A DNA stretch of 64,000 nt, from IMG/VR virus record IMGVR_UViG_3300027985_000918, positions 338,384 through 402,383 of that record. The stretch is one strand, 5' to 3'. This document shows positions 6,225-61,600 of this stretch, piece by piece (positions within the stretch are counted from its first letter, which is position 1; each line of letters begins with the position of its first letter). Under the pieces are notes generated by a model that did no database searches, was not told the origin of the DNA, and saw nothing but the letters and a program-made list of their open reading frames with translations. A program made the translations under genes and the position numbers.

Positions 6225-6860
6225 TCAGGAGAACAGGTTGAACCCGTGGCTGGCCTTCTTGCCGGCGTCCTTCTCGTCGTCCTCGTCCTCGCCGTCAGAA
6301 GCCCAACGGCTACCGGCCTTCTTGCCAGCGTCCTTCTCGTCGTCCTCGTCCTCGTCGTCTGAAGAAGACTTGATGACGCCCGTGGCGAGTTCGAGAGCCT
6401 TGGCAGCCTTGGCAGCCCCTGCGGGGGTCAACTTGGCGCTCTTCAGAGCGGCCAACAGAGCCTTGAAGTTGGCCTGGACACCAGGGTTGGCGGGCTGAGG
6501 ATCGAGGTCCGGTGCGGCGATGTTGCCACTCTCGACCTCCTCTCGAAGCTCCCGGCGCTCCTGCTGGGAAAACTCACCCCTCATGTAGGACTCATCCGAG
6601 TCACCCTCCAGGGGGCCGGCCTTCTCGACACCAATCTCGGAGGGATTGAAATCGGCGTTCTTGAGATTGCCCTTCTGATCTCGCACCAGCCCGGCGGTCC
6701 GCTCGATGCGGTCGGCCAAAAGGTCGCACCGATGAGCGAAATCGGAAGCCACCTTCTCGGGGATGCCGAGAGAAGTGTGCTCCATCTGGATGAGGGTGGC
6801 AATGCGATCCAGAGCGGCGCTAGCCTGGAATGCGCCCTTCTTTGTGATGCTCTTGGGCAT
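6225..6860 (-). CDS. Hypothetical head protein with duplicated acidic C-terminal tail
   Basis: Start moved to ATG at 6860 (MPKSITKKGA) behind a GGAG RBS; tail has DEDEDDEKDAGKKA twice. Confidence 0.6.
   Translation of the reverse strand: MPKSITKKGAFQASAALDRIATLIQMEHTSLGIPEKVASDFAHRCDLLADRIERTAGLVRDQKGNLKNADFNPSEIGVEKAGPLEGDSDESYMRGEFSQQERRELREEVESGNIAAPDLDPQPANPGVQANFKALLAALKSAKLTPAGAAKAAKALELATGVIKSSSDDEDEDDEKDAGKKAGSRWASDGEDEDDEKDAGKKASHGFNLFS
6252..6354. repeat. 40-bp direct repeat (2 copies, 63-bp period), coding
   Basis: ggccttcttgcc(g/a)gcgtccttctcgtcgtcctcgtcctcg at 6252-6291 and 6315-6354, one mismatch. Confidence 0.85.
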
Positions 6861-6979
6861 GTCTTCGTGCTCCTGTTCCATCAAGACCTCAACCAAGTAT
6901 CAGCTCGGGCATTCCAAGCCCTCCGCTGATATGGTCAAGGTATAGACGAAAGATTGAGAATCAGTGGTTCAAAACCCGT

Positions 6980-21671: not shown

Positions 21672-22073
21672 TCACCACCTGCTCTGCTTCACAGAGTCGA
21701 GCCAATACACCATATCCTTCTCCAGGTTGGCGCTCGGCCCAAACTCCTTGTCCTGGTTGTACAGAGAAACCTTGAACTTCCTCGGGGTGCCCTTCACAGT
21801 GATCGTGAAAGGCTCCTTGGTGTCGTGGATCGTGATGATGAGCTGGTAGGGGCCCCGCTTGACAGTATTCTTGCTGAAGCTCCACCACTCCGTGATGACC
21901 TTCTCCACGTCCACCCACCAGTCTCGAACCACCGCCTGCATCCGGGTCTCGAACGGGGTCGTGTTGACCCCAGCGAAATTCGTCCCCCGGGCCTCACGCA
22001 GGAAGGGGACCAGAAGGGAGCGAGTCTCCGGACGCTCCGCAGCCAGCTTCTTCAGATCGTTGTACAAACTCAT
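21672..22073 (-). CDS. Hypothetical protein with N-terminal KLA..P..R..L.P.LR motif
   Basis: Start at 22073 gives an ATGA overlap with the upstream stop; begins MSLYNDLKKLAAERPETRSLLVPFLREA. Confidence 0.65.
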   Translation of the reverse strand: MSLYNDLKKLAAERPETRSLLVPFLREARGTNFAGVNTTPFETRMQAVVRDWWVDVEKVITEWWSFSKNTVKRGPYQLIITIHDTKEPFTITVKGTPRKFKVSLYNQDKEFGPSANLEKDMVYWLDSVKQSRW

Positions 22074-23334: not shown

Positions 23335-23973
23335 TCACTCCCCATCCCGCAGGAGTGGGGCCAGGTGCTGCCGGAGTTCGGGAACCTCGGCTGCGAGCTT
23401 CTTTAGGTCGGCCTCCAAAGAAGCTCGGTGCCCGCTCCGATGTGCCGCATTGACGATGTCGTCAATCTGGTCCACCACCTGCTGGGCACGGTCAGCCAGG
23501 GCCACCGCCACGGGGCGGATCTTCTTTTCAAGCAGGGTAGGGGCCTCGATGTAGTGGCTCCCGAACCTCTCCAGACCCTTGAGCTGGCTCTGAACACTCT
23601 TGATGGCGTCCACTACGGACTTCACGTCAATGAACTGGGAGAAGCTCTTGTCGTTCTGGATCAGCTCGTATGCCTGGACGTAGGGGTCATCCCCAATATT
23701 TGCCGCCTTGTCCCTCATTGCGAATCTCCGCTCGTTCAGCTTAACCTTGGCCCAAACCGCACCTGCGTGTCGGATGAACTTCTCTGCCGTGGATTTGTCC
23801 GGAAACCTCAGAGGGTCCCTCTGATTGTTGGTCGGAGACAACCAGGCCCCTTGGGCATCCCGGATGTACCAGCTCCGGGGGGTACTGATACCAACGGGAA
23901 CCGCCTCGTAAGGTCCCGGGAAAGTGTACTTTTTGATCAGGTCGTAAACCCGCTGGATCTCAGGAGTAGCCAT
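23335..23973 (-). CDS. Hypothetical protein with C-terminal KLA..PELRQHL.PLLR motif
   Basis: Start refined to 23973 (MATPEIQ), 1 nt after the upstream stop; ends HRASLEADLKKLAAEVPELRQHLAPLLRDGE. Confidence 0.65.
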   Translation of the reverse strand: MATPEIQRVYDLIKKYTFPGPYEAVPVGISTPRSWYIRDAQGAWLSPTNNQRDPLRFPDKSTAEKFIRHAGAVWAKVKLNERRFAMRDKAANIGDDPYVQAYELIQNDKSFSQFIDVKSVVDAIKSVQSQLKGLERFGSHYIEAPTLLEKKIRPVAVALADRAQQVVDQIDDIVNAAHRSGHRASLEADLKKLAAEVPELRQHLAPLLRDGE

Positions 23974-24672: not shown

Positions 24673-25758
24673 TCAGCTCCAGACCGAGAACTGGTACTTG
24701 TACTTGATGCCGCCCTGGTCCATCTTCGCCTGGAGCTGCTTCCCCGTCATGCGCTTGATGTCGTCCTGGTTGGCCTTGGCCCACAGGAACATCTTGCGGG
24801 CGCCCGCAGGACTGGTACTCACCAACTTGGTGTAGTGGGGGTCTCCACCGAAGGCGTACTCATCAAGCTGCTTGTCGGTGTAGCCATTGTTGAGGGTGAC
24901 GTCGAACGAGGTCCACTCAGCCTTGATATAGAACTCATCCTTCGCCTTGATCTCGACGGGGGCATAGTCCACCGGCTCAACCTGGAGGTAGTTGACATCC
25001 TCTTCTTTAGGCATCCAACGACCCGTGAGGGACTGGGAAACCCAATCGGGGTACTCCAAACCCTCTTTATCCAGATCCTTGAACGCCTTCTCGATGGCCT
25101 TCTTGAGGCCAGCAGCAGAGGCTTCGGCGGTCTGGGAGGCGTTGGGCTTCCAGTCCCGCTCCAGGTTCTCGATCATGAAGTAGTCGTAGATCTTCCCCAA
25201 CGGTCCCGTCCCGTTGAGACTCTGGATCTGACCACCAATGCCAAACGTGAACCGCTTGAGGCTCCGCTTACCCTTCTGGGGCAGTTCCTCGATGACGACG
25301 TAGTGCCGGGGGTGCCCGGAGATACGGATACGGGTCTTGTCGCCGACGAGAATCTTGTCCCACTTCTCACGGGCGATTCGAGCAGCGGCCCACCGCCCCA
25401 TGAAGTCCTCATCGGCCCTGGCTCCCTCAAACTCCCGCCATGCCTGCTCGGCAGCCTTGCCGGTCAGAATGCTCTTGGTCTGGGGGTAGTAGAGGACCCG
25501 GTCACCCGCCCGGAAAGGGATTCCCTTCTCATCCACGCCGGGGCGCCGGGCGTTGATCCAGCGGGGGTCTCCCCCCTGACCACGGCTCCGGCCGGACCAG
25601 CCGGCCGACTTATCGTCGTTGCCCTCAACATACCCGAGCCCCGGGTCCTCCGCTGACTCCACGTTGAGGTGGGCGTGCTTCCGAAGGAGAGGAACCAGGT
25701 GCTTGCGGATGGACGGCACGTCCACTGCCAACTTGCTCAGCTTGCTGTAGAGATTCAT
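24673..25758 (-). CDS. Hypothetical protein with N-terminal KLA..P.IRKHLVPLLR motif (361 aa)
   Basis: Begins MNLYSKLSKLAVDVPSIRKHLVPLLRKHA; includes FRAGDRVLYYP (SH3-like). Confidence 0.65.
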   Translation of the reverse strand: MNLYSKLSKLAVDVPSIRKHLVPLLRKHAHLNVESAEDPGLGYVEGNDDKSAGWSGRSRGQGGDPRWINARRPGVDEKGIPFRAGDRVLYYPQTKSILTGKAAEQAWREFEGARADEDFMGRWAAARIAREKWDKILVGDKTRIRISGHPRHYVVIEELPQKGKRSLKRFTFGIGGQIQSLNGTGPLGKIYDYFMIENLERDWKPNASQTAEASAAGLKKAIEKAFKDLDKEGLEYPDWVSQSLTGRWMPKEEDVNYLQVEPVDYAPVEIKAKDEFYIKAEWTSFDVTLNNGYTDKQLDEYAFGGDPHYTKLVSTSPAGARKMFLWAKANQDDIKRMTGKQLQAKMDQGGIKYKYQFSVWS

Positions 25759-25789: not shown

Positions 25790-26098
25790 TTACCAAACCC
25801 CTGTTGTCTCAAAACCCCGCCTCTCGAACCAGCTCTGAAGAGACAGCATAGCTTCCCGATTCGAGGACCACAGAGTCACACAGTCGAAACTCTCTCGGAT
25901 GCCGAGGTCTGGGATGGTAGGCACCCCCGCCATCGCCACCTTGCCATCTCTCTGGGATCGGAGCAGCCCGGGGATGTAGCGGTAATCCTTCGCCCCGTAC
26001 AAGACCGAGAATCGAAACTCAGCGGTGGCGATGCGGCTGACCCACCTCCGGGCCACTCGCCTTGCCATGACGATCCTCTTCTCGTTATCCTGGGACAT
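25790..26098 (-). CDS. Hypothetical protein with RVARRW motif (102 aa)
   Basis: AGGAG RBS; late-type ATCGGTAGAG upstream at 26128-26137. Confidence 0.6.
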   Translation of the reverse strand: MSQDNEKRIVMARRVARRWVSRIATAEFRFSVLYGAKDYRYIPGLLRSQRDGKVAMAGVPTIPDLGIRESFDCVTLWSSNREAMLSLQSWFERRGFETTGVW

Positions 26099-26170
26099 GC
26101 TGCTCCTACGGTAAAACCGGGGCTTTGCTCTACCGATAGCCTCACATAGGCGATCTACCGGGGAGCCGCT

Positions 26171-26797
26171 TCAGTCCAGAATAAGCGGAAGGGGAAACAG
26201 CCGCTCGCCGGATCGGCGGACTTCTCGGAGGATGTTCAGGTTGGCGGCGATGAACTCAAACAACCGGATGTACAGGTCGTAAGTGTCGGTCTTGGGACCA
26301 CCCAGCTTGACGGCCTCCTGAAGGTGCTTGATGGTCCGCAGGAACCGATGTCGGACCAAACCCTGGGTAACCCCAAGCTGTTTGGCGACTTCCGACTGGC
26401 AGGTGGTCTTCCACATGCCAAGCATAATCTGGACATCCAGATCATTGCCCAGGAACCCCTGGAGATCTGCCAGAAGGGTTTCCTCTTCGACACGGGGGAG
26501 CTGGAATAGAAACTGGATGCGGGCGGTCGCCCTCTGGAGACGATAGTGAACTGTGGGCTGGGAGCACTCAAACAGCCCGGCGATCTCCGTTTGCTTGAGC
26601 TTTTTGAAGAAGTACAGATCCACGAAGTCTGCTTCCAATGGAGGCAGGAACTCCATGTACTCCTTGACCACCTCAATCTGAGCCAGATCCTCGTCGGAGG
26701 GTTCGGTGAAGATGGAGTCCAGGAACCCCATCCCATCTTCGATAGAGAACCTGGTCTCGATGTCGCTAGGATCGATCATGTGTCCTGTCCAAGCCAT
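26171..26797 (-). CDS. Tandem sigma-70 region-4-like HTH protein
   Basis: Two HTH segments, KLKQTEIAGLFECSQPTVHYRLQRA and TCQSEVAKQLGVTQGLVRHRFLR; start refined to ATG 26797 behind GGGGAG. Confidence 0.65.
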   Translation of the reverse strand: MAWTGHMIDPSDIETRFSIEDGMGFLDSIFTEPSDEDLAQIEVVKEYMEFLPPLEADFVDLYFFKKLKQTEIAGLFECSQPTVHYRLQRATARIQFLFQLPRVEEETLLADLQGFLGNDLDVQIMLGMWKTTCQSEVAKQLGVTQGLVRHRFLRTIKHLQEAVKLGGPKTDTYDLYIRLFEFIAANLNILREVRRSGERLFPLPLILD

Positions 26798-26892
26798 GCG
26801 TGCTCCCCGGCTAAACCCCCAAGAAGGGCTTTCTGCACAGCTCAAACAGACCAACCGACCTTCCAACCATACCCGACAACCGGGCACTGGCC

Positions 26893-27438
26893 CTATGCCG
26901 GGGCGGGCTCCAGTTGCTCCAGGAAGATTCGAGGGATGGAGGCAATACGTCGCCAGGACCTCAGCTCAAACTCAATGTACGCATTGTCTCCGTCGAGACC
27001 GATGACTTTCCCACTCATACTGCGGAACTTCCCCTCCATGACCGTCACCACCGAACCGATCTCCACCTCTGCGGCGATCATCTGTTGGAGCTGACGTCGT
27101 AGGGATTCGATTTCCGAATCGGGGAGGACGGAGAGGGTTCTCATACGGTGAGGGCCGGATGTGGTAGACATCACGGAGGAGACATAGGGACGTCTCTCCA
27201 GGGCAAAGTACGTGGCCTCAGGGAGCCCCGAGGCCACGAACACATAGCCCTCCATCAAGTGGATGGTGATGACCTTGGACTGCTTCCGGTAGATAGCCGT
27301 GGGGATGAAGATGGGGAAGTCCGCATCGACGCCGAGGTCCATCCTCAAACAGGTACTGAGGATTCCTTCCTCAACCTTCTGCTCACCAAGCCGACTCAGC
27401 TCAATGGCGATCCAAGTTGTCCCATCCCGTGTGTCCAC
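26893..27438 (-). CDS. nusG: NusG-family transcription elongation/antitermination factor
   Basis: NGN domain (IFIPT..LMEGYVFV) plus KOW (IGSVVTVMEGKFRSMSGKV..IEFEL). Confidence 0.8.
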   Translation of the reverse strand: MDTRDGTTWIAIELSRLGEQKVEEGILSTCLRMDLGVDADFPIFIPTAIYRKQSKVITIHLMEGYVFVASGLPEATYFALERRPYVSSVMSTTSGPHRMRTLSVLPDSEIESLRRQLQQMIAAEVEIGSVVTVMEGKFRSMSGKVIGLDGDNAYIEFELRSWRRIASIPRIFLEQLEPAPA

Positions 27439-46669: not shown

Positions 46670-49600
46670 CTACTTCTTCAACGCCCAGGGAAGCTGGCAG
46701 GACTCCCCGGAGCAGAACTTATCCTCGGACTCCACATCGTGGGTCCCTTCGTCAAAGTTCAGCGGCTTGATCCCCGACATCATACGGTGGTAGGTAGCCT
46801 CGTTGATGGTCTCGTAGGGAGCCTGCACATACCCGTGAGTCTTGAGGGGCAGCATCGAAATGGACTTAAGCTGATCCTCGAACGCCTCCAAGCAACGGGG
46901 GATTTCGGACACCTCTTCCGAACTGAAGGTCACCGTCACTGAGACCTGGTTGTCAGCCCAGTGCTTCTGGAGAGCAGCGGCCAGAGAGAACTGCTCCCAG
47001 ATGCTAACCTCGTCTTTGGCTCGGTCGAAGTTCTTCTCATGGACCGGGAACTCAATGACGCTGGTGTCGTCGGCGTAGTGGTCCGCCTCGACCGTGTACC
47101 CCGCCTCACGAGCCGCCTTGATGAGGGTGCTCGTGTTGGAGAGCCGGATGCGGCGGATGTAGAACTCGGAGTGAGGGAAGTGGATGCCTGGAGTCGCCCC
47201 CGCCAACAGACTGACGGTCCCCGACGGCTTGATCGAGGTAGTCTTCTTCGACAGGGGAACCCCCAGCCACTCACTGTAGATGCGATCGAGATCCCGAATG
47301 TACTCGTACCCGTCGTCACACCAGTTCAGGAACTCCCGGTGGCCGAGCTTCTGCCGAGCCTGGGCGATCCCGCTCATGGAGCACCCGATGCGGCGGTTCC
47401 GCTGCATCACCAGGTTGGCACGAGGGTCATGAGTAGGGACCAAGGTGACCGTCTTGGCGTACAGGTACGCCATCTTCAATGTCCGCTTGTAGTCGTCCAT
47501 GTCCGCATGGTGAGCGGGGTAGGTCTCCACAAGATTGCATTGGTATGTCAGCACGTTGCCGAACACACCCATATGGTTCTCGGGCTCATCGAAGCAGTAG
47601 GTCGTATGCAAACCATCCAGCTTTTCGACCTTGACCACCTTCTGTTCCCGAGCCCGGTCGAGGGGCTGTCCTTTCGGGTGTGCATTGTTCATGGTGTAAC
47701 GGTCCCCCAGGGAGGTCAGCACCTTCAGCCGGGTCGGGATCTCGGCACACTCGTAGCTGGGGATCGTAAGATAGTAGAGGTCATAGTTCCGGGTGCCGTA
47801 GTTGGTCTCGGCCCCCGCCTCAGCGAACATCCGAAGGCTGGCATGATTGACACCCACTCGCCGGAGAAGAAGCTGGGCGTCACGCAGCTTGGCCTCGGAA
47901 CCATACAGTCGGAACCCTTCCGCCACCGAACCGGCATTGGTGATGCTGCCATCGGCCTCGATCCACCCTGCCATGAATTCCAGAATGGAGCCCCTGTCCA
48001 TGCGGAGAATGTCCGGTGCCAGACCGGAGGTCTTGGACCGGAGGGACTCCGCAACATTCACCGGGAGGATGCCCTTCAGATTGAGGCGGTTGACCGGGTC
48101 CGTGTACCCCTCGACGATCTGCGGCTTGTGCCATGTGCCGTGGACGTCGAGATCCATGAGCTTGGCCTTTTCCCCGCAGATGGCGACCATCGGGTAGGTG
48201 TAGCCCCCCTCCCGATCCAGGTAGCCACCCCCTGCAAAAAGCCCCCACTCAAAAGCCGCCACGTTGTGCTCGCCGTCGATGGGGGCGTCGATGTCGAAGG
48301 AAATGACCTGACTGCCCTTGGTAAGCTCTGCCGTCTCAACTCGGCGGAATACACGCTTTCCGACCGGCTTGACGTGCCACCCGTGGTTCCCCGTGCAGTC
48401 CAGGTATGAACCGTCGGACAAATGGACCCGGAACAACTCCCGGCCCTCCCCCGTCACCCGAGGGGTCACCGTAGACCAGCCATCGCCATTCCAAATGTCC
48501 ACAGACTCTCCGGCCAGCTCGGAGATGGCCTGAATCCCTCGGCGGTGCTGGATGTAAGTGTCCGAACTCACACACAATTCAAAGGATTCGAGCGATTGCT
48601 CGCCGCAGGGATTCGTGCCCAGAATGCGGTGGTCTCGCCCATCCGGAGGGTCCCCCATGCGTCCGTACTGGCGGGCGTTGTCCAGCCAGAAGATGCCGGG
48701 CTCACCGTTGGCAGCGATTCGGGAGGCAACCGAGGTGTAGTCCATGCCGGGGTAGCCAAACACGCTGTTGTTCGACGCCCATCGGCGATCATTCAGGGGG
48801 TGAGCCTGGATGGCCTGCTCAACCTCACCCAGCTCCTCCTCCCACTGACCAATCTGGAAGTCCCCAGGGTTCTTCTCGATCAGGTTCCGCAACTCACTCT
48901 CTCGGGCGTACAGGGGAAGCAAGTCCGCATTGGACTTGAGGTTGATGAACTTCTCGTCGGAAGCCTGGCCGAACATAATCTCGGCGGTGTTGTGGACGAG
49001 ATAACCCCCCTGAACCACGAACTCACCGGCCTCCACCGAGATATCGTAAGTCTCATCCTCCCGCACCCGATGTTCGACGTAAATGACCTCTACGGGCACC
49101 AGCACCACATCCTGCCCCGTCAGGTCTTCCAGTCGGGCAATAGTGATCTGCCGGGAGGACCGGGACCACCGCATTTGACCGTCCTTCCACCCGCTAACCC
49201 CACCATCCAGCGCCATCTGCGAGGGGAACCCGTAATCGTACTGAGAACGGGAGGACTCCCGAGTCTCAGTGAACTTCAACGAGTGCGAGGCGACCTTTCG
49301 CTGAAACCCCGCCAACGCCTTCTCACCGACGACCGTGAGGTGAAAAAGAGGCTGCCAACCGTTCGTCTCACGGCTCTTGTCCTTGTGAAGCTGAAACCGG
49401 CTCGGAACACCCAACGAGGCCAACACCGCTTGGACCCCCTCCAAAAAAGAGGGGTACACGCTGGCAGCCACCACCAGAGGACGGTTCTTGATGGACCCGT
49501 CCGCATCCATCAAACCGGCCACGAACGCAGCCCGAACTTCGGGCAAACCCCGAAGGACGATGTCGGGAACCTCCAAGGTCGTCTTGGGCTGCTTGAACTG

Positions 49601-51148
49601 ACCCAGGAACTCCGCCAACTGCTTCGACTTGACCCGCACTTTAAAGCACTGGTCCCCATCACGGGGATCTTGGACGGTGACGTTCACCCCGAACCGCTGA
49701 AGACAGGACATCGCCCGTGCGGCGATGTCGCCCTGATCCCCGGCCACGGCGATGGACACCTCCTTGTCGTTGACGTACCCGTCCCCCTGGAACAACCCCA
49801 ACAGCCACGCCATCTCGGCATCCAGCTTTGGGATGGTGATGTTCGTACAAGTTGTGGAGCCCAAGGGCGAGGCGTAGTTATACGACGGAAACTCGGTGGC
49901 GACCCCCTCAATGAGCCGGTCCACGAAAACCATCCGGTCCCCCGGCTCCAACTCGTGCAGCTTTTTCCACGAATACCCGCCACTCACGTCAGAGATCACG
50001 GCGATCTTGTGCTTATCCGTCGCCTCGAAGACCCCCATCTGGGTAACGACCTGACTGATTGGCTGAACCCCCTGCTCCACCCAATCGGTGACCCGGCTCA
50101 ACCCCTGGGATGTCATCACCTGAGAACCCACCTTCACCTTCTCAATAGGCACCAACCCCTCTGCCGTATGAACAAGGGTGCCCGCCGGAAGGCAACGACG
50201 AACCCCCCCGGCCACCACACACTTCCCGATGAAGTTGAACACGTCTACGATCTGATCGGACTGGATGCGGTAGGGCTTACCCTGGCCCTCGAACAGCACC
50301 TTGATCTCGTCGATGTCCGTGGGGTTGCCATCCCACCCCTCCCGCTGGGCCCCGTTGGGCTCGACCGTCCGGAACTTGACGGTAACCCCCTCGGGCAGCA
50401 GAAGACGGGTAACCCCCTCGACCAACCGCTTCAGGGGGGCGGCGCCGGAAGCGATCCCACCAAAGCCGAGGATGGCAGTTCCCCGAGGACGAACCTTCGT
50501 GTAGTCGATGGTGAGGGGGAACTGACCACGACCCACGAAGCTGTTCAGGACGGTGCGAGCCAGCTCGACCCAGCCCTCACGGCTGTCCTCCACGAGAAAC
50601 GGGGTGTCCGTCGTCTTGGGGGTCTGGATTCGGGCCTTCCCCTCACCACGGGTGTCCCCGCCTACCCCGACCCCCAGCATAGACATGTCCATGAGGAACG
50701 TGAAAGGGGCGGCGAACTCCTGGTCAATGTCCTTCGTGCTGACGAAAGCGCAGTTTTGCAGAGCGGCAGCCCCCTTGTCGTAGATGAGGTCAGTCCCCAT
50801 CATCCAGAGCCCACGGCCCGGGGGCGTCCATTTGAAGTCCCAGAGCCGCTGGAACATGTCCTGGGCGCTCTTCTGGGCCTTGGGTTCGTTCCACATCAAC
50901 CCCATCGTCAGGCAGTGGTCCTTCTGGATGTTGAAACACCCTTCGACCACCCGCTGGCATGTCTGCCAGAACTCTTCGGTTGTCCCGTCCGAGAGTGTCC
51001 GGGCATATGTGCGCTTGTACGTGAAGTACCCGAGGCCTCCGAAGCCCCACTCCGGCTGCTTCCCCTGGAATTGCTCCAAGAAACCTTGGCTCAGCTTGAA
51101 CGCTCGCACCTTTCTGTCGGTCACGGGGGGGTTGGGATTGAAAATCAT
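46670..51148 (-). CDS. nrdJ: Class II (adenosylcobalamin-dependent, monomeric-type) ribonucleotide reductase with two inteins
   Basis: YKRTYAR, PPGRGLW, NCAFVS, GGVRR|TAEI, ASNNSV, GEPG, NPCGEQ..EL|CNLVE, RRIGCS, KPSGTVS, C-terminal CSGESC; start refined to 51148. Confidence 0.93.
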   Translation of the reverse strand: MIFNPNPPVTDRKVRAFKLSQGFLEQFQGKQPEWGFGGLGYFTYKRTYARTLSDGTTEEFWQTCQRVVEGCFNIQKDHCLTMGLMWNEPKAQKSAQDMFQRLWDFKWTPPGRGLWMMGTDLIYDKGAAALQNCAFVSTKDIDQEFAAPFTFLMDMSMLGVGVGGDTRGEGKARIQTPKTTDTPFLVEDSREGWVELARTVLNSFVGRGQFPLTIDYTKVRPRGTAILGFGGIASGAAPLKRLVEGVTRLLLPEGVTVKFRTVEPNGAQREGWDGNPTDIDEIKVLFEGQGKPYRIQSDQIVDVFNFIGKCVVAGGVRRCLPAGTLVHTAEGLVPIEKVKVGSQVMTSQGLSRVTDWVEQGVQPISQVVTQMGVFEATDKHKIAVISDVSGGYSWKKLHELEPGDRMVFVDRLIEGVATEFPSYNYASPLGSTTCTNITIPKLDAEMAWLLGLFQGDGYVNDKEVSIAVAGDQGDIAARAMSCLQRFGVNVTVQDPRDGDQCFKVRVKSKQLAEFLGQFKQPKTTLEVPDIVLRGLPEVRAAFVAGLMDADGSIKNRPLVVAASVYPSFLEGVQAVLASLGVPSRFQLHKDKSRETNGWQPLFHLTVVGEKALAGFQRKVASHSLKFTETRESSRSQYDYGFPSQMALDGGVSGWKDGQMRWSRSSRQITIARLEDLTGQDVVLVPVEVIYVEHRVREDETYDISVEAGEFVVQGGYLVHNTAEIMFGQASDEKFINLKSNADLLPLYARESELRNLIEKNPGDFQIGQWEEELGEVEQAIQAHPLNDRRWASNNSVFGYPGMDYTSVASRIAANGEPGIFWLDNARQYGRMGDPPDGRDHRILGTNPCGEQSLESFELCVSSDTYIQHRRGIQAISELAGESVDIWNGDGWSTVTPRVTGEGRELFRVHLSDGSYLDCTGNHGWHVKPVGKRVFRRVETAELTKGSQVISFDIDAPIDGEHNVAAFEWGLFAGGGYLDREGGYTYPMVAICGEKAKLMDLDVHGTWHKPQIVEGYTDPVNRLNLKGILPVNVAESLRSKTSGLAPDILRMDRGSILEFMAGWIEADGSITNAGSVAEGFRLYGSEAKLRDAQLLLRRVGVNHASLRMFAEAGAETNYGTRNYDLYYLTIPSYECAEIPTRLKVLTSLGDRYTMNNAHPKGQPLDRAREQKVVKVEKLDGLHTTYCFDEPENHMGVFGNVLTYQCNLVETYPAHHADMDDYKRTLKMAYLYAKTVTLVPTHDPRANLVMQRNRRIGCSMSGIAQARQKLGHREFLNWCDDGYEYIRDLDRIYSEWLGVPLSKKTTSIKPSGTVSLLAGATPGIHFPHSEFYIRRIRLSNTSTLIKAAREAGYTVEADHYADDTSVIEFPVHEKNFDRAKDEVSIWEQFSLAAALQKHWADNQVSVTVTFSSEEVSEIPRCLEAFEDQLKSISMLPLKTHGYVQAPYETINEATYHRMMSGIKPLNFDEGTHDVESEDKFCSGESCQLPWALKK
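47540..48574 (-). mobile_element. Intein 2 in nrdJ (345 aa), Gln-terminal, LAGLIDADG-type endonuclease
   Basis: Starts CVSSDT, ends VLTYQ before extein Cys (CNL); endonuclease motifs GLFAGGG (degenerate) and AGWIEADG. Confidence 0.88.
48989..50194 (-). mobile_element. Intein 1 in nrdJ (402 aa) with LAGLIDADG homing endonuclease
   Basis: Starts CLPAGT, block B TDKH, ends LVHN before extein Thr; LGLFQGDG and AGLMDADG motifs. Confidence 0.93.
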
Positions 51149-51216
51149 GTTGTCTCCATCTGGCGAACAGTACACCGCCAGGTCAAACGGGTGTCATGTG
51201 GTGACCCTGAGGCAAC

Positions 51217-53553: not shown

Positions 53554-54090
53554 TCAGCAGTCGAACTGCGTGTATGTCAAAGGATCGGGAAGATCCGAAC
53601 GGATCACAGGTTCTCCGGGGGCTCCGTGGTCTGAGGTGACGATCACTGCCGGGGAGCCCATCTGCTCATCGGTGGGAAGATACCCGGCGTCCTGGCATCC
53701 CTGGATCAAAGCCTCCGCATAGAAGTCCATCAACGAATCCCACTGGCCTCCCTGGAAGAACGACCGCAGGACGTGGTTCTCGGTGACCGTGATCTTGGTG
53801 GTAGGGACCCCTGTTCTGGTGGGGACCTCTTCGGAGGTCTGAATCTTGAACCGAGCATCTTCCAGAATGGGGACCACCACTTGATGCCAAAGCCCCGACT
53901 CCACCTGCATGGGAAAGTAGGCTTGAAACCTGTTGGCCAAGGAACCTCGGAATTCCAAACTGACCTGCACGAATCTGGAAGGGCCGGCCATCGTGGATTC
54001 GGGAAAATCCAGCACGGCCCGTCCTACCGCCAGGTGCATACAGGCCACCGCCAGCCCCTCGACGAATTTCTTGTGGGTGTCAATCGACAT
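53554..54090 (-). CDS. Hypothetical protein
   Basis: ATG 54090 behind GGAGG. Confidence 0.55.
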   Translation of the reverse strand: MSIDTHKKFVEGLAVACMHLAVGRAVLDFPESTMAGPSRFVQVSLEFRGSLANRFQAYFPMQVESGLWHQVVVPILEDARFKIQTSEEVPTRTGVPTTKITVTENHVLRSFFQGGQWDSLMDFYAEALIQGCQDAGYLPTDEQMGSPAVIVTSDHGAPGEPVIRSDLPDPLTYTQFDC

Positions 54091-54102
54091 CACGGCCTCC
54101 AC

Positions 54103-54256: not shown

Positions 54257-54428
54257 CCACCTATACCATAGCTGGGTTGACGGCTACCGTAAGGGCTGCC
54301 TACGTATGGGGAGCATCCTCAGTAGGATCTGTAGGAGGCTCAGTTGTTGGGGCTCTACGAGTTTTCGTATCGCTTTCGGGATCTGGTGTAGTTACGGTCG
54401 TCCTTCGGACTCCCTGGGAGCATTGATC

Positions 54429-54731
54429 CTACTGATCCATCCTAATGCTCTCCCGGAAGGTTTCCCCGAAGGACGAAGAGGGCTGCCTGAACCCCAGGCA
54501 TCCGAACCGCCTGGGAGACTCCCTCTCGGGGCCATACCTCCTGTCGGAGGGGTAGGCCACGCCGAGGCTGACCTTCCCACCCGAGGGGTCGTTCGGGACC
54601 CGCAGGGTGGGAACTAGTGGTTCAAAGACCATGCGACCTGGCGGCGTCCTGCACAGCTCAACGGCTTCCGCTCTGGTTTCCCAGTTGCCCAGGGGGATGA
54701 CCCAGGCACACCCCCAGTAGGGGGAGGTCAC
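54429..54731 (-). CDS. Possible hypothetical protein (100 aa)
   Basis: GTG-start ORF in a gap; no motif or clear RBS. Confidence 0.25.
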   Translation of the reverse strand: MTSPYWGCAWVIPLGNWETRAEAVELCRTPPGRMVFEPLVPTLRVPNDPSGGKVSLGVAYPSDRRYGPERESPRRFGCLGFRQPSSSFGETFRESIRMDQ

Positions 54732-54787
54732 GGCGACTATACCCGAAAAGTGAAGGGTGGGGAACGGGGAAGATCGAAACCGGGGGA

Positions 54788-55978
54788 TTAGCCTCGCAGG
54801 AGGGGAACCAGGTGCTGGCGGAGTTCGGGGTGTCCGGAGGCCAGCTTACACACGTCCTGGCGGAGGATAGCCTCCATCTGGAACCCGTACTTGCGGAACC
54901 GACCGAACGTGCTCTCGTCCTCCATGATGTCGGACCAGGAGATGTCCTGGGTCTCCACACCCAACGTATCCAGCCTGTTCCGCACCGCCCGCTGAAGAGA
55001 CTGGTTTCCTTCCATGGCCTGGAAAATGACAGGCATGGCGGCCATCCAGTGCTTTTTGACTTTGACTTTTGCCGCAGCCTCTCCTTTGCTGTCCATCCCC
55101 GGAACGATGTATCCGGCAGCTTCCGCAAGCTCCTTCCCCGAGATGAACTCTCCACGATTCAGAGCCTCCCACCAAGCCTGCATGGTGGGGATGGCGGCAG
55201 TGGGAATCTTCGTGTCGATGATCTTTTTGATAGCCTGCCGGACGGCCTTCCCCAGCGGGTCGTTGGAGAAGAAAACCATGTCGAACACGTCCCTCGACAC
55301 CTGAGAGGGATCAGCCACGCCACCATGGCCGCCTTCCTCGGTCTGCCCGTGCGGTCCGGTGTCCAGAGTAATCCCCTGGATCCTCTGGTGGCGACGGAGC
55401 TTGTTGATCACGTTAAGAGCGGCCTTCTTGAGGCTCTTGCCAAGGGCCCCAGCGGCAACTTTGCCCGGGGATTCAGTACCGTCCAGGATGCCCGCCGAGA
55501 GGAATTTGCCGGCTTCCCAGAATTTGTTCTTGATCTTGCGGCGGACGACCTCCCCTTCTTCATCGACGTCGGCTCCCAGGCCAGCAACGCCGTCCTGGAC
55601 GACATCCTCCCCGGTCATGTCGGGGACCCCCGAGCGGCTGAGCCAACCGTCGAGTTGCCGGGTGAGCATCCGCACCATCCCCGTAGAGTTCGGGAGGAAC
55701 CAGTCGGGGTCCATGTCAGGGACGTACTCGGCCAGGTGGGCCTGGGCTTTCTTCAGCCCTCTCATGGGGTTCTGAGCCCAGGTGAACTCCCGGACCCCCG
55801 CTGCCCCCTCAAGGATGACCAGGCGGGCCATCACGTCGTAAAGGCCGTCCTCCGTCAGGGCCTTCTTCAGGTGGCGGTACGCCAGCCGGATGGCGGCCTG
55901 TTTCCCTCGGCTGGCAAAACGCTTATGAGAGGTTTCCCGGAGCGTAATCAGAGCCAAGAGCTTCTGGTACATGTTCAT
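54788..55978 (-). CDS. Sigma-factor-like protein carrying the C-terminal KLA..PELRQHLVPLLR motif (396 aa)
   Basis: Region-2-like EDVVQD..LKKAALNVINKLRR; HTH-like ISGKELAEAAG; tag motif at the extreme C-terminus. Confidence 0.55.
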   Translation of the reverse strand: MNMYQKLLALITLRETSHKRFASRGKQAAIRLAYRHLKKALTEDGLYDVMARLVILEGAAGVREFTWAQNPMRGLKKAQAHLAEYVPDMDPDWFLPNSTGMVRMLTRQLDGWLSRSGVPDMTGEDVVQDGVAGLGADVDEEGEVVRRKIKNKFWEAGKFLSAGILDGTESPGKVAAGALGKSLKKAALNVINKLRRHQRIQGITLDTGPHGQTEEGGHGGVADPSQVSRDVFDMVFFSNDPLGKAVRQAIKKIIDTKIPTAAIPTMQAWWEALNRGEFISGKELAEAAGYIVPGMDSKGEAAAKVKVKKHWMAAMPVIFQAMEGNQSLQRAVRNRLDTLGVETQDISWSDIMEDESTFGRFRKYGFQMEAILRQDVCKLASGHPELRQHLVPLLRG

Positions 55979-56081
55979 GCTATGATCCTCATTGGAGCCG
56001 GGAACCCCCCGGGCCTGTTCCTGTTGAAGGTGGGGTATAGGAACCCTACCGATCTCATCCCCATGTCGGACCTTCTGGTGC

Positions 56082-56208: not shown

Positions 56209-57732
56209 ATGTCGGTTCCGCAGCAGCCCGGGAATTTCGCCCGGGGGGAGCTTCACCAAGCTCTCTTCGCCCACTTCGCCAAGTCCCCCATTAACACGCC
56301 GCACGATGCCAGACAGGTTCTCGACCAGGTGATGATCGATCTGGGAAGGGACGATGACCGTAGTCGCAAAGCCATCCGGAAAAGTTTCTACAAGATGGTG
56401 GATGGCGGCTACATGCGTCAGACTGGCCGGGGTTCCTGGGCGTTGACCGAGTCGGGGATGGAGGTGTTCATCTCCAAGTCCAATGGACAGAAACCAGCCC
56501 CCAAAAAGAACATCGACGCTTCACCTCTCCCCAAGCCGAAGCCCCCGACCCCCGAGCAGAGTTACGCCGCCCAGCTCGCCAACAACGTAGGTACGTTGGC
56601 GATGAGGGATGATTTGTCTTTCACGATGCGGACTCGTACCCTCGACGAGCTGAACCGGGACATCATCGACACGTCGATGCAGGTGGACAAGGTGGAGAAA
56701 GCCACAGAGGCCGCACTGGAGCAGATTCGGGAGACCCGCCGAATGGTCGAAAAGCTGAAGATGGACCGGGCCATCTCTGAAGCTCGGGCCACAAAGGAGA
56801 GAGTCCAGAAGCGCCTCGCCCAGGTGTTGGACACCCAACAGAAGGTGTACGCTGAGCTGGCTTCTCTCCGGGCCGAGGTCAACGCTTTCCAGACTGAGAC
56901 TCCTAGCATGGATAATGCTGTCGTTGTCCCTGAGAGCAACGACGGGGACGACGGGGACGAGGGGGACGAGGGGGACGAGGGGGACGACGACCCGGACCTA
57001 TCGGGGCCGGACGATCACCGTCGTTCGGCCCCTGACAAGAACTACACCTCTGAGTGGTTGAGCACTCACCTTCGCCCCACGGGGCGAAGCGGCGAATCAA
57101 AATTGATGCGGGCCATGAAGGCTGCCGTCCGCTCGAAATGTCCGATCTCCGCTCAGTCTGATAAAGTGGAGGACCACATCCAGGAGTTCCTGTTGAAGCT
57201 GGTTCGTCGGGACGGCCTCCGTAAGAAGATCTTGGCAGGCGACAAGATCACCTACAGCCATCTGGCCTCCTACGCCGTCCGTAGCGCCTGGACGGACGCC
57301 CGGAACGCCGGCACAGAGCCGGTGGAGCGGGAGATGTACGGTGCCCGGACGGAGAGGGAGCGGAGAGAATGGGGGGACACCCCCCTCCCAGAACTCCCTC
57401 AGACAAAGCCAGACTCCCGACTCATTTGGGGAGGGGAGGAAGATGGAAACTCCGCCATCGTCGGCGTCGTCGACGCCGCCAACCCTCCTGACGTTTTGTT
57501 CCAGCAGCGGAAAGACTTCGAGGTTATGTGGTCTCGTATCGAGACCGTCATGCGGTCTCAGAAACCCCAAGCGTGGGAGCGGTACTCCGGAATCTTGCGG
57601 ATGAAGTACCAAGGGCTTTCGACAGACGACATTGCCGAGAAAGAGAACGTCTCTACCCACCGGGCGGCATCCCTGATCCAGGAAGCCAAGTCTGCCATTC
57701 GTGCGGTGGGGTTCGAGAGTCTTATGGCTTAG
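56209..57732 (+). CDS. ECF-like sigma factor fused to N-terminal winged-HTH, coiled coil and acidic linker (507 aa)
   Basis: AAGGAGG RBS; wHTH-like FYKMVDGGY..TGRGSWALTESG; sigma2 VEDHIQEFLLKL..LASYAVRSAWTDAR; sigma4 ILRMKYQGLSTDDIAEKENVS..SLIQEAKSAIR. Confidence 0.75.
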   Translation: MSVPQQPGNFARGELHQALFAHFAKSPINTPHDARQVLDQVMIDLGRDDDRSRKAIRKSFYKMVDGGYMRQTGRGSWALTESGMEVFISKSNGQKPAPKKNIDASPLPKPKPPTPEQSYAAQLANNVGTLAMRDDLSFTMRTRTLDELNRDIIDTSMQVDKVEKATEAALEQIRETRRMVEKLKMDRAISEARATKERVQKRLAQVLDTQQKVYAELASLRAEVNAFQTETPSMDNAVVVPESNDGDDGDEGDEGDEGDDDPDLSGPDDHRRSAPDKNYTSEWLSTHLRPTGRSGESKLMRAMKAAVRSKCPISAQSDKVEDHIQEFLLKLVRRDGLRKKILAGDKITYSHLASYAVRSAWTDARNAGTEPVEREMYGARTERERREWGDTPLPELPQTKPDSRLIWGGEEDGNSAIVGVVDAANPPDVLFQQRKDFEVMWSRIETVMRSQKPQAWERYSGILRMKYQGLSTDDIAEKENVSTHRAASLIQEAKSAIRAVGFESLMA

Positions 57733-58655: not shown

Positions 58656-61600
58656 TCAAGTCCTCGGCGGTTTGCTACGTCCAACGTAGGGGCTTGCCAT
58701 CAACTCCATCACCTCACGGTCCAACCGCACGTTTCCGGCGTCCCTCTTGGTGATCTCGTCCCACTCCAGCCCCAGGTTCTTGGCCTGTGCGTCTTTGATG
58801 ATACGGTCGAACAGGTCTGACTCCATCGACTGGAACCAGCGGCGGATTTCATCGAGGGTGGCATCGAATTCGTCCAGGTTCTCCGGGTCGTGGGAGAACG
58901 TGGCGTCGATGGTCACCTCATCCACGGGTTGCTCCTGCCCCTGACGCCAGGACCGGGCGGTCCTTTGCTTCATGTTCTCCGAGCTGAACGTGTCCCGGTC
59001 GAGGTGGATGACCGTGTCGAACGACTGGAGATTGTGCCCGAATTGGTATGTCTGCCCCAGCAGAGTACATGTCTTGATCCTGCTGTTGGGACTCACGACC
59101 TCCTTGAGCACGAACTGCTGCCAGCGGTCCGCTTTGTAGTGTACGTTGTAGAGACGGTGCGCCGGCAGTTCAGGCCAGCGCCGATATGCCTTGGCCTTGA
59201 ACGGTAGCGGGATGCGGGCCTTGCCCCCTTGGAGATTAGACAGGGCCGCACGGGCTTTGTCCTCGTCCCCCCGGAAGATGCGGACCACCTCTCGGGGGTC
59301 CACGTCAAAGGCGACCTCGTGGACCTCCCCGCCAGAGCTGTAGATGTTGATGGAGTCGTTTAGGGCGACGACATGCCAACCCGGGATAGTCTTCGCCAGA
59401 TGCTCTCCCGCCATCCGGCAGAGCTTCTTGTCATCTGCGAACACCAGCGCCCGGCTCGCCCCCTCGGCAGCTTCCAGCTTATCCGAGATGGTTTTGGTCA
59501 TGGCCTCCAGCTTAGGGTTCCCCAGGCGGTCCCCGATGCCCCGCAGGTCCTCCGGGGTGTACTTCTCCCCCCACGCCTTCAGCACCCTCCAGAGAGCCCT
59601 TGGGACAGGTTTTCCGTCAGGGGTCTCCCGAGTCTCCAACATGTGGGCCACGTCCTGCATAGCGTCTCGGGGATAGTTGGACAGGCCGTTCAGGAGCTTC
59701 AAAATCGGCCGGAACTGAAGCCCAAAGGCCCGTTCGATCTCCGGGTCTCTTGCCTCAGGGATGACTTTGCCGTCCGGGGCAAAGCCTCGGTCACGGAACT
59801 TCGCTACCAGTCCCCTCATGAGACGGGGCATCGTGGAGGTCACGTCCCGGTAGATGGACTCTACAGCGGAATCCATCTCCACAGCCAGGGTTTCCGGGCG
59901 CAGTGCGGGCAGCTCGAACTCTTCGACGTCGGTTTTGTCAGCGTAGAAGACGTTGCTCTTCACCCAGGTGTCCAGGTCATTTTTGACCAGGGGGTCCTCT
60001 TTGACGCCGACCACCCGGCCGCCCACCCGATCGGTAAATCGCTCCATGAACCGTCGCATCTCTACCCGGTTCCGCTTGGCTCCCTCGGACTTGGACGACA
60101 GGTCGATGTTGTTAGCGATGGCTGCCAACAGATACGCCTGCTCGGGCTCCCGCTCCATCGGAGAAGCGGAGAGCAGGATCTTTCTTGGGTGGAAGATGCC
60201 GTTGGCAGATTTGAACTTGGAAGAACTGGGGCTCGCCAGCTCCTGGGCCTCATCGAAAAAGATGGCGGTGTAGAGTTGGATGTCCCAGACCTTGCCCTCA
60301 GCACCCTGCTTCGGGCTCATTCCCCGCTCACGGCTCTTCCAGTACCCCACAGCTTTGAGAGACCGTGGGATGGTCCCTGAGGCTGCGGACCGACTGAACT
60401 CACTGTACGAGATGATGTCCACGACATCCAGGAGACTGGTCGAGGCGTCCCTCTCCAGAAACCCTCGGATCTCCTTGGGCAAGTTTCCCTTGAGGGAACC
60501 GGGGGACACGAACAGAAACCGTCCGTTGGTCTGGATGTTTTTGCCAGTGCTGGGGTCTCTATATGTAGCACCAATTTCCCCGAGTCCGTCCCGGGTGAGT
60601 TTTTGCATCATGCCGATAGCAGTGAGGGTGTTGTGATTAATCACCCCGTTGCCCACGAAACAGTGAGAGGGGTGATCTACTTCGATGTCCATCACGACTG
60701 CCACGGAGTCCTCGCAGACCTCGATGGGGTCGTAGAAGAACCGGCGGTCCACCACATGTGAGATGGCCTTGAAGCTGGGGTGGTCATGGCAACAGAGCGC
60801 CGCTGCTTTGCCGAGCATGCCGGACAGGAATGAGTAGGTGGGGTTCCGGCGGCCCCGTCGTACATGGTTCACCGTGTTGTAGAACGCTGGTCCATGCTGT
60901 CGCCGGAACCCGCTGACGTTAGTGTCCCCTTGGATCAGCATCTCATCGAAAAGCCGGCCAACCTCCACGGCAAGGTGGGGCACTGTGTCGAGATTGGAGT
61001 TCCGGCTCGAAGGTGTATTAACGAAAGCTGCCTGTTTCCGCTCGGACACGAACCCGATCTCCTGCCAGTACCGGACGGCATCCTCCCCTGTGATAGTCAC
61101 TCGCCAGTACGTGTGATCGAAACCTTTCACCTTCTTGGGGTGACGACTGCACAGGACGTTGAATCGGAGCAGGAGAACCTGAAGCTCCCGACCCAACTGC
61201 TCAGAAGCGGTCGTGAACTCGATGTTGGCACGAGATCCCTGAACATGGCCCTCAGCATCCACCAGCCCACGAATGAACTGGCGCATCGTCTCTTTGGTGG
61301 AACGTAGGATGATTTCTGGTACAGCCTTGTCCTTGGCGACCCCCATGCCGACCCCCATGCGAAGCAGGTACTCCCGCAGGAATCGACTCATCACCACGAT
61401 GTCCTTGTCGGGCTGGGTTTCCAAGCCCAGCAGGCGATGCAGCAGAGCTTCGATGTCTGCTCGGACCTCGGGGTTTTTCTCCGGGCACTGGCTGATTGAG
61501 AACAGCTTGTGATGGTTCGTCCATCCCTCGGCCACGATGTACCCGAGAAGCCGCCCCATCTCAGGAGACATCCGGTCAGGTACCGGGAAAATGTTCACGT

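What the first reader, a model, noticed from the sequence alone, without database searches (positions are those of the whole stretch)
54788..55978. A sigma-like factor that carries both virion-type tags
Seen: this sigma-like ORF, far from the head genes, ends in VCKLASGHPELRQHLVPLLRG and begins with KRFAS..KQAAIRLAYRH. It also has the late-type ATCGGTAGGG motif upstream (56044-56053). Inference: made late, packaged, and injected to reprogramme host RNA polymerase at the start of the next infection. The sigma assignment itself is only moderate.
Basis: partly seen in the sequence, partly recalled or inferred. Interest (0 to 1): 0.75.

Follow-up and report, generated by a model that had tools for sequence, protein, structure and literature searches.

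The report
Tagged sigma-like factor of huge phage
A 402-kb phage from a hydrothermal-vent metagenome encodes a very divergent sigma-like transcription factor that has a structural-gene-type promoter and a short peptide tag shared with proteins of the head-gene block, so it may be loaded into the virion, but that step is untested.

Summary

The C-terminal "tag" is a genuine portable module of about 30 aa (SLRxxLIKLAxExPELRKHLVPLLK). It occurs 5 times in this genome and 1-12 times in each of four related huge phages. It usually sits right after the Met of small unrelated proteins, and several of these lie between a small sigma gene and the terminase.

The N-terminal "tag" is mainly an intrinsic extension of this protein family. 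Only weak look-alikes (RxAS + helix) cluster in head-block proteins.

It is the left half of a real 16-nt element, CGGT-N6-CCTAT(A/G). This element precedes baseplate, sheath-initiator-like and sheath genes, the head-block leader, this gene, and its orthologues in four other phages.

Late expression is therefore plausible. Packaging and injection remain inference (about 0.35).

The parts
54788..55978 (-). Sigma-like ORF, 396 aa (the finding)
   Evidence: ORF list and sequence. 167 relatives at E<=1e-3 among 1.84 billion representatives. The closest is P0001, 49-52% identical.
55844..55978 (-).
   Evidence: AF2 helices, pLDDT >90. Present in most family members (61 of 150 score >5 bits at the N-terminus). 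Absent from the tag-less subfamily that starts at about residue 46 (P0039, P0041, P0043, P0047).
55367..55843 (-). Sigma-2-like domain, residues about 46-204, with an inserted beta-hairpin and short helices (134-176)
55310..55366 (-). Disordered linker, residues about 205-223
   Evidence: pLDDT <50 for residues 210-221.
54977..55267 (-). Sigma-4-like HTH domain, residues about 238-334
54791..54880 (-). C-terminal Tag A, residues 367-396: helix-Pro-helix module ...ILRQDVCKLASGHPELRQHLVPLLRG
   Evidence: HMM E 1.4e-17. Conserved in P0001. Also at or near the C-terminus of P0080, P0090 and P0133. Helices 355-382 and 384-395, pLDDT 50-77.
56036..56051 (-).
   Evidence: One of 7 intergenic CGGT-N6-CCTAT[AG] sites, all with a 6-nt spacer and gene-proximal. 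Orthologues in L001, L006, L007 and L008 carry it 40-55 nt upstream of the ATG.
56209..57732 (+). Divergently transcribed long sigma-like gene, 507 aa; conserved partner of the family
   Evidence: Weak Sigma70_r4_2 hit, E 0.018. Same divergent pair in G001 (L006 7611-8798) and G002 (L008 8573-9799).
25669..25758 (-). Tag A copy at the N-terminus of the 361-aa protein 24673-25758
   Evidence: HMM E 5.5e-19.
23338..23433 (-). Tag A copy at the C-terminus of the protein ending at 23335, preceded by HRAS
   Evidence: HMM E 2e-17.
21984..22073 (-). Tag A copy at the N-terminus of the 133-aa protein 21672-22073
   Evidence: HMM E 3.4e-19.
26145..26160 (-). Same bipartite element (CGGTAGATCGCCTATG) in front of the 102-aa leader gene 25790-26098 of the head-block gene string
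   Evidence: sequence. The leader protein starts with an RVARRWV motif.
26171..26887 (-). Small sigma-like gene, 238 aa, directly upstream of the head-block leader
   Evidence: Sigma70_r4_2 30.1 bits, over the cut-off. PHROG sigma factor families, E 7e-11.

Best explanation
The gene encodes a very divergent sigma-70-family protein of the two-domain (ECF-like) type: sigma-2, flexible linker, sigma-4. Its family was traced only to a clade of huge phages (contigs up to 619 kb), and four full records from that clade share an almost identical 290-aa major head protein.

Shown:
- The two-domain sigma-like fold.
- A conserved divergent pairing with a second, long sigma-like gene.
- A core (residues about 46-335) flanked by two appendages.
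- A C-terminal appendage that is a portable helix-Pro-helix peptide of about 30 aa (Tag A). It is carried by otherwise unrelated, mostly small proteins of this clade. In all four genomes checked, some of these lie between the small sigma gene and the terminase.
- An upstream 16-nt element, CGGT-N6-CCTATA. In this genome it otherwise precedes a baseplate gene, a baseplate/sheath-initiator-like gene, a sheath gene, two genes of unknown function and the head-block leader. It is conserved in front of the orthologues.

Inferred:
- The element is the late (structural-class) promoter, so the protein is made together with virion parts.
- Tag A, and the RxAS-plus-helix motif at the N-terminus, dock their carriers into the assembling head. 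The RxAS motif may be cut by the head maturation protease.
- The sigma-like protein therefore travels in the capsid, enters the next cell with the DNA, and directs host RNA polymerase core to the phage's first promoters.
For: Fold:
- Full model pLDDT 86.7. At least 25 of the top 50 hits among 48,161 PDB chains are sigma region-4 domains over residues 238-334.
- N-domain model pLDDT 95. About 15 of the top 50 hits are sigma region-2 domains over residues 45/60/90-204.
- hhalign to a 51-member huge-phage ECF-like sigma family: 67% probability, E 5e-5, on region 2.1-2.2.
- ESM Atlas named neighbours: 65 of 100 carry Sigma70_r2.

Promoter:
- 7 intergenic CGGT-N6-CCTAT[AG] sites, all with a 6-nt spacer. 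Six start 52-73 nt upstream of the start codon and one starts 200 nt upstream.
- Their genes are a T4 gp9/10-like baseplate protein, a baseplate/sheath-initiator-like protein (the Pfam match is below its cut-off), the tail sheath, the head-block leader, two of unknown function, and this gene.
- The element is retained upstream of orthologues in L001, L006, L007 and L008, and upstream of Tag A genes in G002 and G004.

Tag A:
- 5 copies here; 7, 8, 12 and 1 copies in four relatives.
- It is N-terminal, C-terminal, tandem, or present three times in one 749-aa ORF.
- Carriers include WGR, DUF2958 and HExxH proteins.
- Tagged genes lie between the small sigma gene and the terminase in G000-G003.

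Other:
- RxAS is 4.4-fold denser in head-block proteins, binomial P 1e-7. The acidic scaffold-like protein has 6 copies and the protease has 1.
- The small sigma gene lies in the replication-gene string, directly upstream of the head-block promoter. That makes it a natural candidate for the late sigma and leaves this protein as a late product.
Against: - No data show that any Tag A protein is in a virion.
- The gene sits among replication genes (clamp loader, RNR, RecD2 helicase), not head genes.
- A tag-less paralogue exists next to another sigma gene.
- The N-terminal motif is packed in the predicted fold at high confidence, so it may be structural rather than a signal.
- RxAS enrichment is partly compositional: control motifs reach 1.3- to 3.3-fold, and the region was chosen after seeing the data.
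- "Late" rests only on association with structural genes. A sigma factor carrying its own regulon's promoter is also what positive autoregulation would look like.
Confidence: 0.35

Rival explanations
1. It is the phage's late-gene sigma factor, or one subunit of it, acting inside the producing cell. The CGGT-N6-CCTATA element is the promoter it recognises. It stands in front of its own gene because the factor is positively autoregulated, as many ECF sigma factors are. Tag A is a docking peptide for some shared partner unrelated to packaging.
For: - Sigma-2/sigma-4 architecture.
- The same element precedes structural genes and this gene, and is conserved in orthologues.
- The conserved pairing with a second sigma-like gene could indicate a two-part factor.
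- From established knowledge: T4 gp55 and gp33 both carry a short C-terminal clamp-binding tail shared with other proteins.
Against: - It does not explain why the same peptide sits on many small unrelated proteins of the head block, on arrays of paralogues, and three times on one 749-aa ORF.
- A compact 16-nt element with a 6-nt spacer is not the -35/-10 layout that a sigma-4 plus sigma-2 factor would normally read.
- The small sigma gene at the end of the replication-gene string, directly upstream of the head block, is a better-placed candidate for the late factor.
Confidence: 0.25
2. It is a late-made regulator with a sigma-like fold. It binds RNA polymerase or DNA without acting as an initiation factor, for example as a competitor that shuts off earlier gene classes or as a partner of the neighbouring long sigma-like protein. 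The tags concentrate it and other proteins at a common assembly site or hub in the infected cell, without encapsidation.
For: - No sigma sequence model matches.
- Large insertion in the sigma-2-like domain and long extensions at both ends.
- The C-domain also resembles generic HTH regulators: LexA, TetR, LuxR type.
- Conserved neighbour pair.
Against: Both sigma domains are recovered, in the right order and with a linker. Region 2.1-2.2, the core-binding part, is the best conserved match to bona fide phage sigma factors.
Confidence: 0.2
3. The shared motifs are chance or compositional, and the protein is an ordinary orphan phage protein.
For: The N-terminal motif HMM does not beat shuffled proteomes. 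The 10-mer is not enriched.
Against: - Tag A copies score E 1e-15 to 1e-19 with nothing in between.
- The family has 167 relatives.
- The bipartite DNA element is conserved at a fixed distance in four orthologous loci. Chance is about 2e-4 per 100 nt.
Confidence: 0.02

Closest known systems
ECF (group IV) sigma factors, e.g. E. coli sigma E, M. tuberculosis SigL/SigH, Bartonella EcfG-type RpoE
   Same: Two helical domains in the order sigma-2, flexible linker, sigma-4 HTH. These are the best structural matches for both domains. There is a region 2.1-2.2-like DxxxxALMGL helix.
   Different: No Pfam or PHROG match. It has a 45-aa N-terminal extension, an insertion of about 40 aa with a beta-hairpin inside sigma-2, an insertion inside the HTH, and a 60-aa C-terminal extension ending in Tag A. 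At 396 aa it is about twice the usual 170-200 aa.
T4 internal proteins and Alt, with the capsid targeting sequence (established knowledge)
   Same: A short conserved terminal peptide is shared by otherwise unrelated, mostly small and fast-diverging proteins encoded near head genes. The phage has a head maturation protease. An RNA-polymerase-modifying protein is delivered with the DNA.
   Different: The T4 signal is about 10 aa, strictly N-terminal, and cut after LxE. Here the module is about 30 aa, can be N-terminal, C-terminal, tandem or internal, and has no sequence likeness. Nothing here is experimentally shown.
P22 scaffolding protein C-terminal helix-turn-helix and encapsulin cargo-loading peptides (established knowledge)
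   Same: A short terminal helical element that docks a protein to the inner face of an HK97-fold shell. Tag A is a basic helix-Pro-helix, and the clade's head protein is 86-89% identical across genomes.
   Different: No sequence relation. The prediction of the tag against the head protein gave no verdict.
Virion-packaged transcription machinery: N4 vRNAP, phiKZ virion RNAP, poxvirus early transcription system (established knowledge)
   Same: The idea that the virus carries what it needs to start transcription in the next cell.
   Different: Those are polymerases. A packaged sigma-like specificity factor that uses the host core has, to my knowledge, not been described.
T4 gp55/gp33 late transcription factors (established knowledge)
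   Same: Phage sigma-like factors that carry a short C-terminal docking tail also found on other phage proteins.
   Different: That tail binds the sliding clamp and is a short hydrophobic motif. Tag A is a 30-aa helical hairpin found mainly on head-block proteins.

Membership tests
Sigma-70 family (ECF-like two-domain type) | Sigma-4 domain: four-helix domain with the -35-binding HTH | tested here: met
Sigma-70 family (ECF-like two-domain type) | Sigma-2 domain: core-binding and -10-recognition helices | tested here: inconclusive
Sigma-70 family (ECF-like two-domain type) | Match to curated sequence models (Pfam Sigma70_r2, r4, r4_2, ECF) | tested here: not met
   No sigma family at E<=0.1 for the protein, or at E<=0.01 for any of 81 family members. 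The PDB profile search gave no sigma hit for the N-domain and only E 0.07 for the C-domain.
Sigma-70 family (ECF-like two-domain type) | Binds RNA polymerase core and confers promoter-specific initiation | not testable with these tools
   The host is unknown and no biochemical data exist.
Capsid-targeted (packaged or ejected) head proteins of the T4 internal-protein type | Short conserved terminal peptide shared by unrelated proteins of one phage | tested here: met
   Tag A: 5 copies here and 28 in four relatives, on unrelated carriers.
Capsid-targeted (packaged or ejected) head proteins of the T4 internal-protein type | Carriers encoded with, and expressed like, head genes | tested here: inconclusive
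   Three of the 5 copies lie in the gene string headed by the structural-class element and running to terminase and portal. The same placement is seen in G001-G003. This gene lies elsewhere but has the same upstream element. Timing has not been measured.
Capsid-targeted (packaged or ejected) head proteins of the T4 internal-protein type | Physical presence in virions, and processing by the head protease | not testable with these tools
   No proteomics. RxAS enrichment in head-block proteins is only suggestive of a cleavage or recognition motif.
Capsid-targeted (packaged or ejected) head proteins of the T4 internal-protein type | The signal binds a head component | tested here: inconclusive
   The complex prediction of the head protein with the C-terminal 47 residues returned no verdict.

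The most novel reading that the evidence does not exclude
A clade of 0.2-0.6 Mb phages uses a portable helix-Pro-helix peptide of about 30 aa, often preceded by RxAS, as a loading signal. It puts a varied cargo into the capsid: anti-defence-like proteins, perhaps the giant topoisomerase IB protein encoded next to the portal, and a sigma-like factor. The virion would then carry a poxvirus-like starter kit that captures host RNA polymerase the moment the DNA enters.
Probability: 0.3. Interest if true: 0.85.

Novelty: new variant of a known kind. Interest (0 to 1): 0.66.

Why it matters
Huge phages without their own RNA polymerase must seize the host enzyme at once, and how they do this is largely unknown. 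A sigma-like factor made with virion parts and marked with the same peptide as head-block proteins gives a concrete, testable route.

Independently of that, three results stand on their own:
- A new sigma-like family that sequence models do not detect.
- A clade-wide portable peptide tag that could serve as a handle for finding packaged proteins, or for loading cargo into capsids.
- A defined structural-class promoter element for an uncultured phage lineage.

Tried and rejected
- Pfam and PHROGs on the protein and on 81 relatives: no family.
- tblastn against 50,697 phage records: no match.
- Foldseek of the whole model against the PDB, and of the N-domain against BFVD: only generic all-helical noise. 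The sigma signal appeared only with the exhaustive aligner.
- PDB profile searches: N-domain nothing, C-domain only weak generic HTH hits, Tag A nothing meaningful.
- Word-based protein search restricted to the tag region: no candidates.
It worked with 12 rows.
- Complex prediction of the major head protein with the C-terminal 47 residues: no verdict, so no evidence either way.
- N-terminal motif treated as a general tag: its HMM did not beat shuffles in this genome, and in five genomes it found almost only the family itself. I therefore reject it as a portable tag, while noting the head-block clustering of weak hits.
- The 10-mer ATCGGTAGGG as a motif: rejected. It is not enriched and is not conserved in the closest relative.
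- CGGT-N6..12-CCTAT[AG] counted over the whole genome is at shuffle expectation: 12 against about 11. Only the intergenic, fixed-spacer, gene-proximal subset is non-random.
- Intrinsic terminator downstream of the gene: the fold is no better than shuffles, z 0.4.
- RNA-seq: no RNA run listed; only DNA runs from hydrothermal-vent metagenomes hold the sequence. No reads were laid.
- ESM Atlas on the 361-aa Tag A protein: nothing usable.

Full report
Context. The window is the last 64 kb of a 402,383-bp virus record with direct terminal repeats. Public runs that hold it are DNA runs from hydrothermal-vent metagenomes. The window carries two blocks:
- A head/packaging block on the minus strand: major head protein 666-1538, maturation protease 4011-5561, portal 12145-14052, large terminase 14676-16673.
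- A replication block: clamp-loader subunits, processivity factor, primase-like protein, RecA, RecD2-type helicase, and an RNR and a SNF2 helicase that both contain inteins.

The observation. ORF 54788..55978 (-) is 396 aa. It has an ATG start and a GAGGA Shine-Dalgarno-like sequence 8 nt upstream. Its N- and C-terminal sequences are exactly as quoted. ATCGGTAGGG lies at 56044-56053 on the coding strand. The gene is about 38 kb from the terminase gene.

Is it a real gene family? Yes. A word-indexed search found one relative at 49% identity. An exhaustive HMMER search found 167 representatives at E<=1e-3, 81 of them at E<=1e-10. Sixteen loci recovered from IMG/VR lie on contigs of up to 618,736 bp, seven of them longer than 200 kb. 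The genome also holds a tag-less paralogue (31% identity), next to a 332-aa protein that passes the Pfam ECF sigma cut-off.

Is it sigma-like?
- Sequence models say nothing.
- An AlphaFold2 model from an 81-row alignment has mean pLDDT 86.7. It shows an N-terminal helical domain (3-201), a disordered stretch (210-221), a second helical domain (224-338) and a lower-confidence terminal helical hairpin (355-395).
- A profile-profile comparison with 51 members of the huge-phage ECF-like sigma family aligns region 2.1-2.2 at 67% probability, E 5e-5.
- Language-model neighbours are dominated by Sigma70_r2 clusters, 65 of 100 named hits.
- I conclude that the protein has the sigma-2, linker, sigma-4 architecture. 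It also has an insertion in sigma-2 (beta-hairpin 134-148 and helices 152-176) and extensions at both ends. Function as an initiation factor is inferred.

Gene neighbourhood. The family is transcribed divergently from a long sigma-like gene (507 aa here; 395 and 408 aa in two relatives) that has a weak region-4 match and a clearly orthologous C-terminus. Downstream come a conserved non-coding stretch, a protein of about 180 aa, and a clamp-loader subunit, in the same order in the relatives. The phage has at least five sigma-like genes: this one, its paralogue, the long neighbour, the ECF-like 332-aa protein, and a 238-aa protein with two region-4-like HTHs at 26171-26887.

The C-terminal tag (Tag A).
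- An HMM built from the copies finds exactly five in the genome, E 3e-19 to 2e-17, and then nothing better than E 0.29. The five are this protein's C-terminus, the N-terminus of the 361-aa protein 24673-25758, the C-terminus of the protein ending at 23335, the N-terminus of the 133-aa protein 21672-22073, and one in genome ORF 6683-7627.
- The closest orthologue keeps it.
- The same module occurs 7, 8, 12 and 1 times in four related genomes of 436, 536, 381 and 619 kb. These genomes share a head protein 86-89% identical to this one, while their terminases are only 50-57% identical.
- The consensus is SLRxxLIKLAxExPELRKHLVPLLK, with invariant L-A, P and P.
- It mostly starts right after the initiator Met of small proteins. 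It also occurs C-terminally, in tandem, three times in one 749-aa ORF, and in an array of eight consecutive small ORFs.
- The carriers are unrelated to each other. Two have WGR domains, one has DUF2958 and one has an HExxH motif. The rest are unknown.
- When the tag is internal or C-terminal it is usually preceded by xxAS: HRAS|LEADL, RLAS|LRRAT, KRAS|SDLRE, QGAS|LHQDV.
- In G000-G003, one to three tagged genes lie between the small sigma gene and the terminase gene.
- Tag A has no relative among solved structures.

The N-terminal tag (Tag B).
- The string KRFAS...AAIRLAYRH belongs to a motif, RxAS-x(3-8)-RVAxRWL, that is typical of this protein family. It scores above 5 bits at the N-terminus of 61 of 150 representatives and, as a second copy, at the C-terminus of 16.
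- In the model it forms the loop and second helix of a well-packed N-terminal extension.
- A subfamily, including the paralogue here, lacks that extension.
- Four or five family members carry Tag A in the C-terminal slot where others carry Tag B, so the two look interchangeable.
- Outside the family the motif is not statistically detectable.
- Eight of the 14 best weak hits fall in the roughly 32 kb around the head genes.
- RxAS is 4.4 times denser there: 23 in 9,795 aa against 58 in 108,311 aa, binomial P 1e-7. Control permutations reach 1.3- to 3.3-fold. The acidic scaffold-like protein has six copies and the protease has one.
- This suggests a head-specific recognition or cleavage motif but does not prove one. 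A simple helix N-cap is an alternative reading.

The DNA motif.
- The 10-mer is not enriched and is not conserved in the closest relative.
- Two broader signals are real. First, RGTAGV is three times over expectation in upstream regions, with a 2:1 forward bias and a peak 20-40 nt before start codons.
- Second, a bipartite element, CGGT-N6-CCTAT[AG], occurs 12 times in the genome, which is the shuffle expectation. Seven of these are intergenic, in the 12% of the genome that is intergenic. All seven have exactly six spacer bases and all point at a gene. Six start 52-73 nt before the start codon and one starts 200 nt before it.
- The seven genes are a T4 gp9/10-like baseplate protein, a baseplate/sheath-initiator-like protein (its Pfam match is below the curated cut-off), a 1,778-aa protein with a tail-sheath domain, a 1,969-aa and a 273-aa protein of unknown function, the 102-aa leader of the head-block gene string, and the gene under study.
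- The element is kept 40-55 nt upstream of the ATG of the orthologues in L001, L006, L007 and L008. One-mismatch versions occur in four further loci.
- In relatives, the few strict sites again include family genes and Tag A genes.
- I therefore read it as the structural-class (late) promoter core. The class label is inferred from the genes it precedes.

What it most likely does.
- Shown: a sigma-like two-domain protein; a structural-class upstream element conserved across the clade; a portable peptide shared with head-block proteins.
- Inferred: late synthesis, loading into the head through the tags, delivery with the DNA, and capture of host polymerase.
- I give this chain 0.35. The main rival, an autoregulated late sigma factor whose tag has another partner, gets 0.25. 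A late regulator or assembly-site-tethered protein that is not packaged gets 0.2.
The small sigma gene sits at the end of the replication-gene string, just upstream of the head-block promoter. And the distribution of Tag A resembles that of T4 internal proteins.
- The absence of any physical evidence keeps the confidence low. The single complex prediction returned no verdict and no RNA data could be found.

Novelty. Phage sigma factors and virion-delivered transcription proteins are both known. New here are a sigma-like family invisible to sequence models, its conserved structural-class promoter, and a clade-wide portable tag. I found no description of such a tag in the searched literature.

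Noticed in passing
window 54381-54740 (- strand), in the 685-nt gap between the target and gene 53554-54102: A non-coding stretch is more conserved than the flanking proteins. It has near-identical blocks with L001 and is alignable in L006, L007 and L008. RNAalifold on five sequences gives 60 pairs, 29 of them with compensatory changes. Rfam gives no match at E<=0.1. It is a candidate new structured RNA, syntenic with the sigma-like family.
   Followed up: partly
window 6980-12100 (-): A 1,706-aa protein combines a 2',5'-RNA-ligase/LigT-like domain with a eukaryotic-type topoisomerase IB core. It is encoded between the portal and the head protease and carries Tag-B-like strings (KGASTSLRLAAEWIRKA, RVASAYLYRQ) just after the topoisomerase domain.
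   Followed up: partly
window 666-1538 (-) and G001-G004: The 290-aa major head protein is 86-89% identical across genomes of 381-619 kb whose terminases are only 50-57% identical. That is unusually strong constraint on the shell protein.
   Followed up: partly
window 26171-26887 and 26893-27438 (-): A 238-aa protein with two sigma region-4-like HTHs is preceded by a NusG/KOW-like protein. The pair and its position just upstream of the head block are conserved in G001-G004.
   Followed up: partly
G003:C1:183092-186879 and G001:C1:414782-416746: There is an array of eight consecutive small ORFs that each begin with Tag A, and a 749-aa ORF with three Tag A copies, each followed by a different domain. 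The second looks like a polyprotein or a fusion of tagged units.
   Followed up: partly
window 46670-51175 (-) and 58656-63728 (-): Inteins with LAGLIDADG homing endonuclease domains interrupt the B12-type ribonucleotide reductase and a SNF2-type helicase. The relative L001 also has the RNR intein.
   Followed up: no
whole genome, upstream regions: AGGTAAC occurs 25 times in upstream regions against 2.3 expected. In the one site checked it lies directly before the start codon (24673-25758). I read it as an unusual ribosome-binding-site consensus, but did not test this. RGTAGV is a general upstream element: 113 forward, 53 reverse, 34 expected.
   Followed up: partly
window 2452-3978 (-): A 508-aa extremely acidic protein between the protease and the head protein is a likely scaffold. 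It has six RxAS sites, including RKFASLKNRIATYF and RTASSRVDNLSDLW.
   Followed up: partly
L006 8900-11068 (+); P0003, P0007, P0063: In several relatives, two copies of the sigma-like family are fused in one reading frame of 640-720 aa.
   Followed up: no
genome 10.5-13 kb (outside the window): Upstream-region strings such as GCTCAGTTGGTAGAG look like tRNA D-arms, so there is probably a tRNA gene cluster here. I did not scan it.
   Followed up: no
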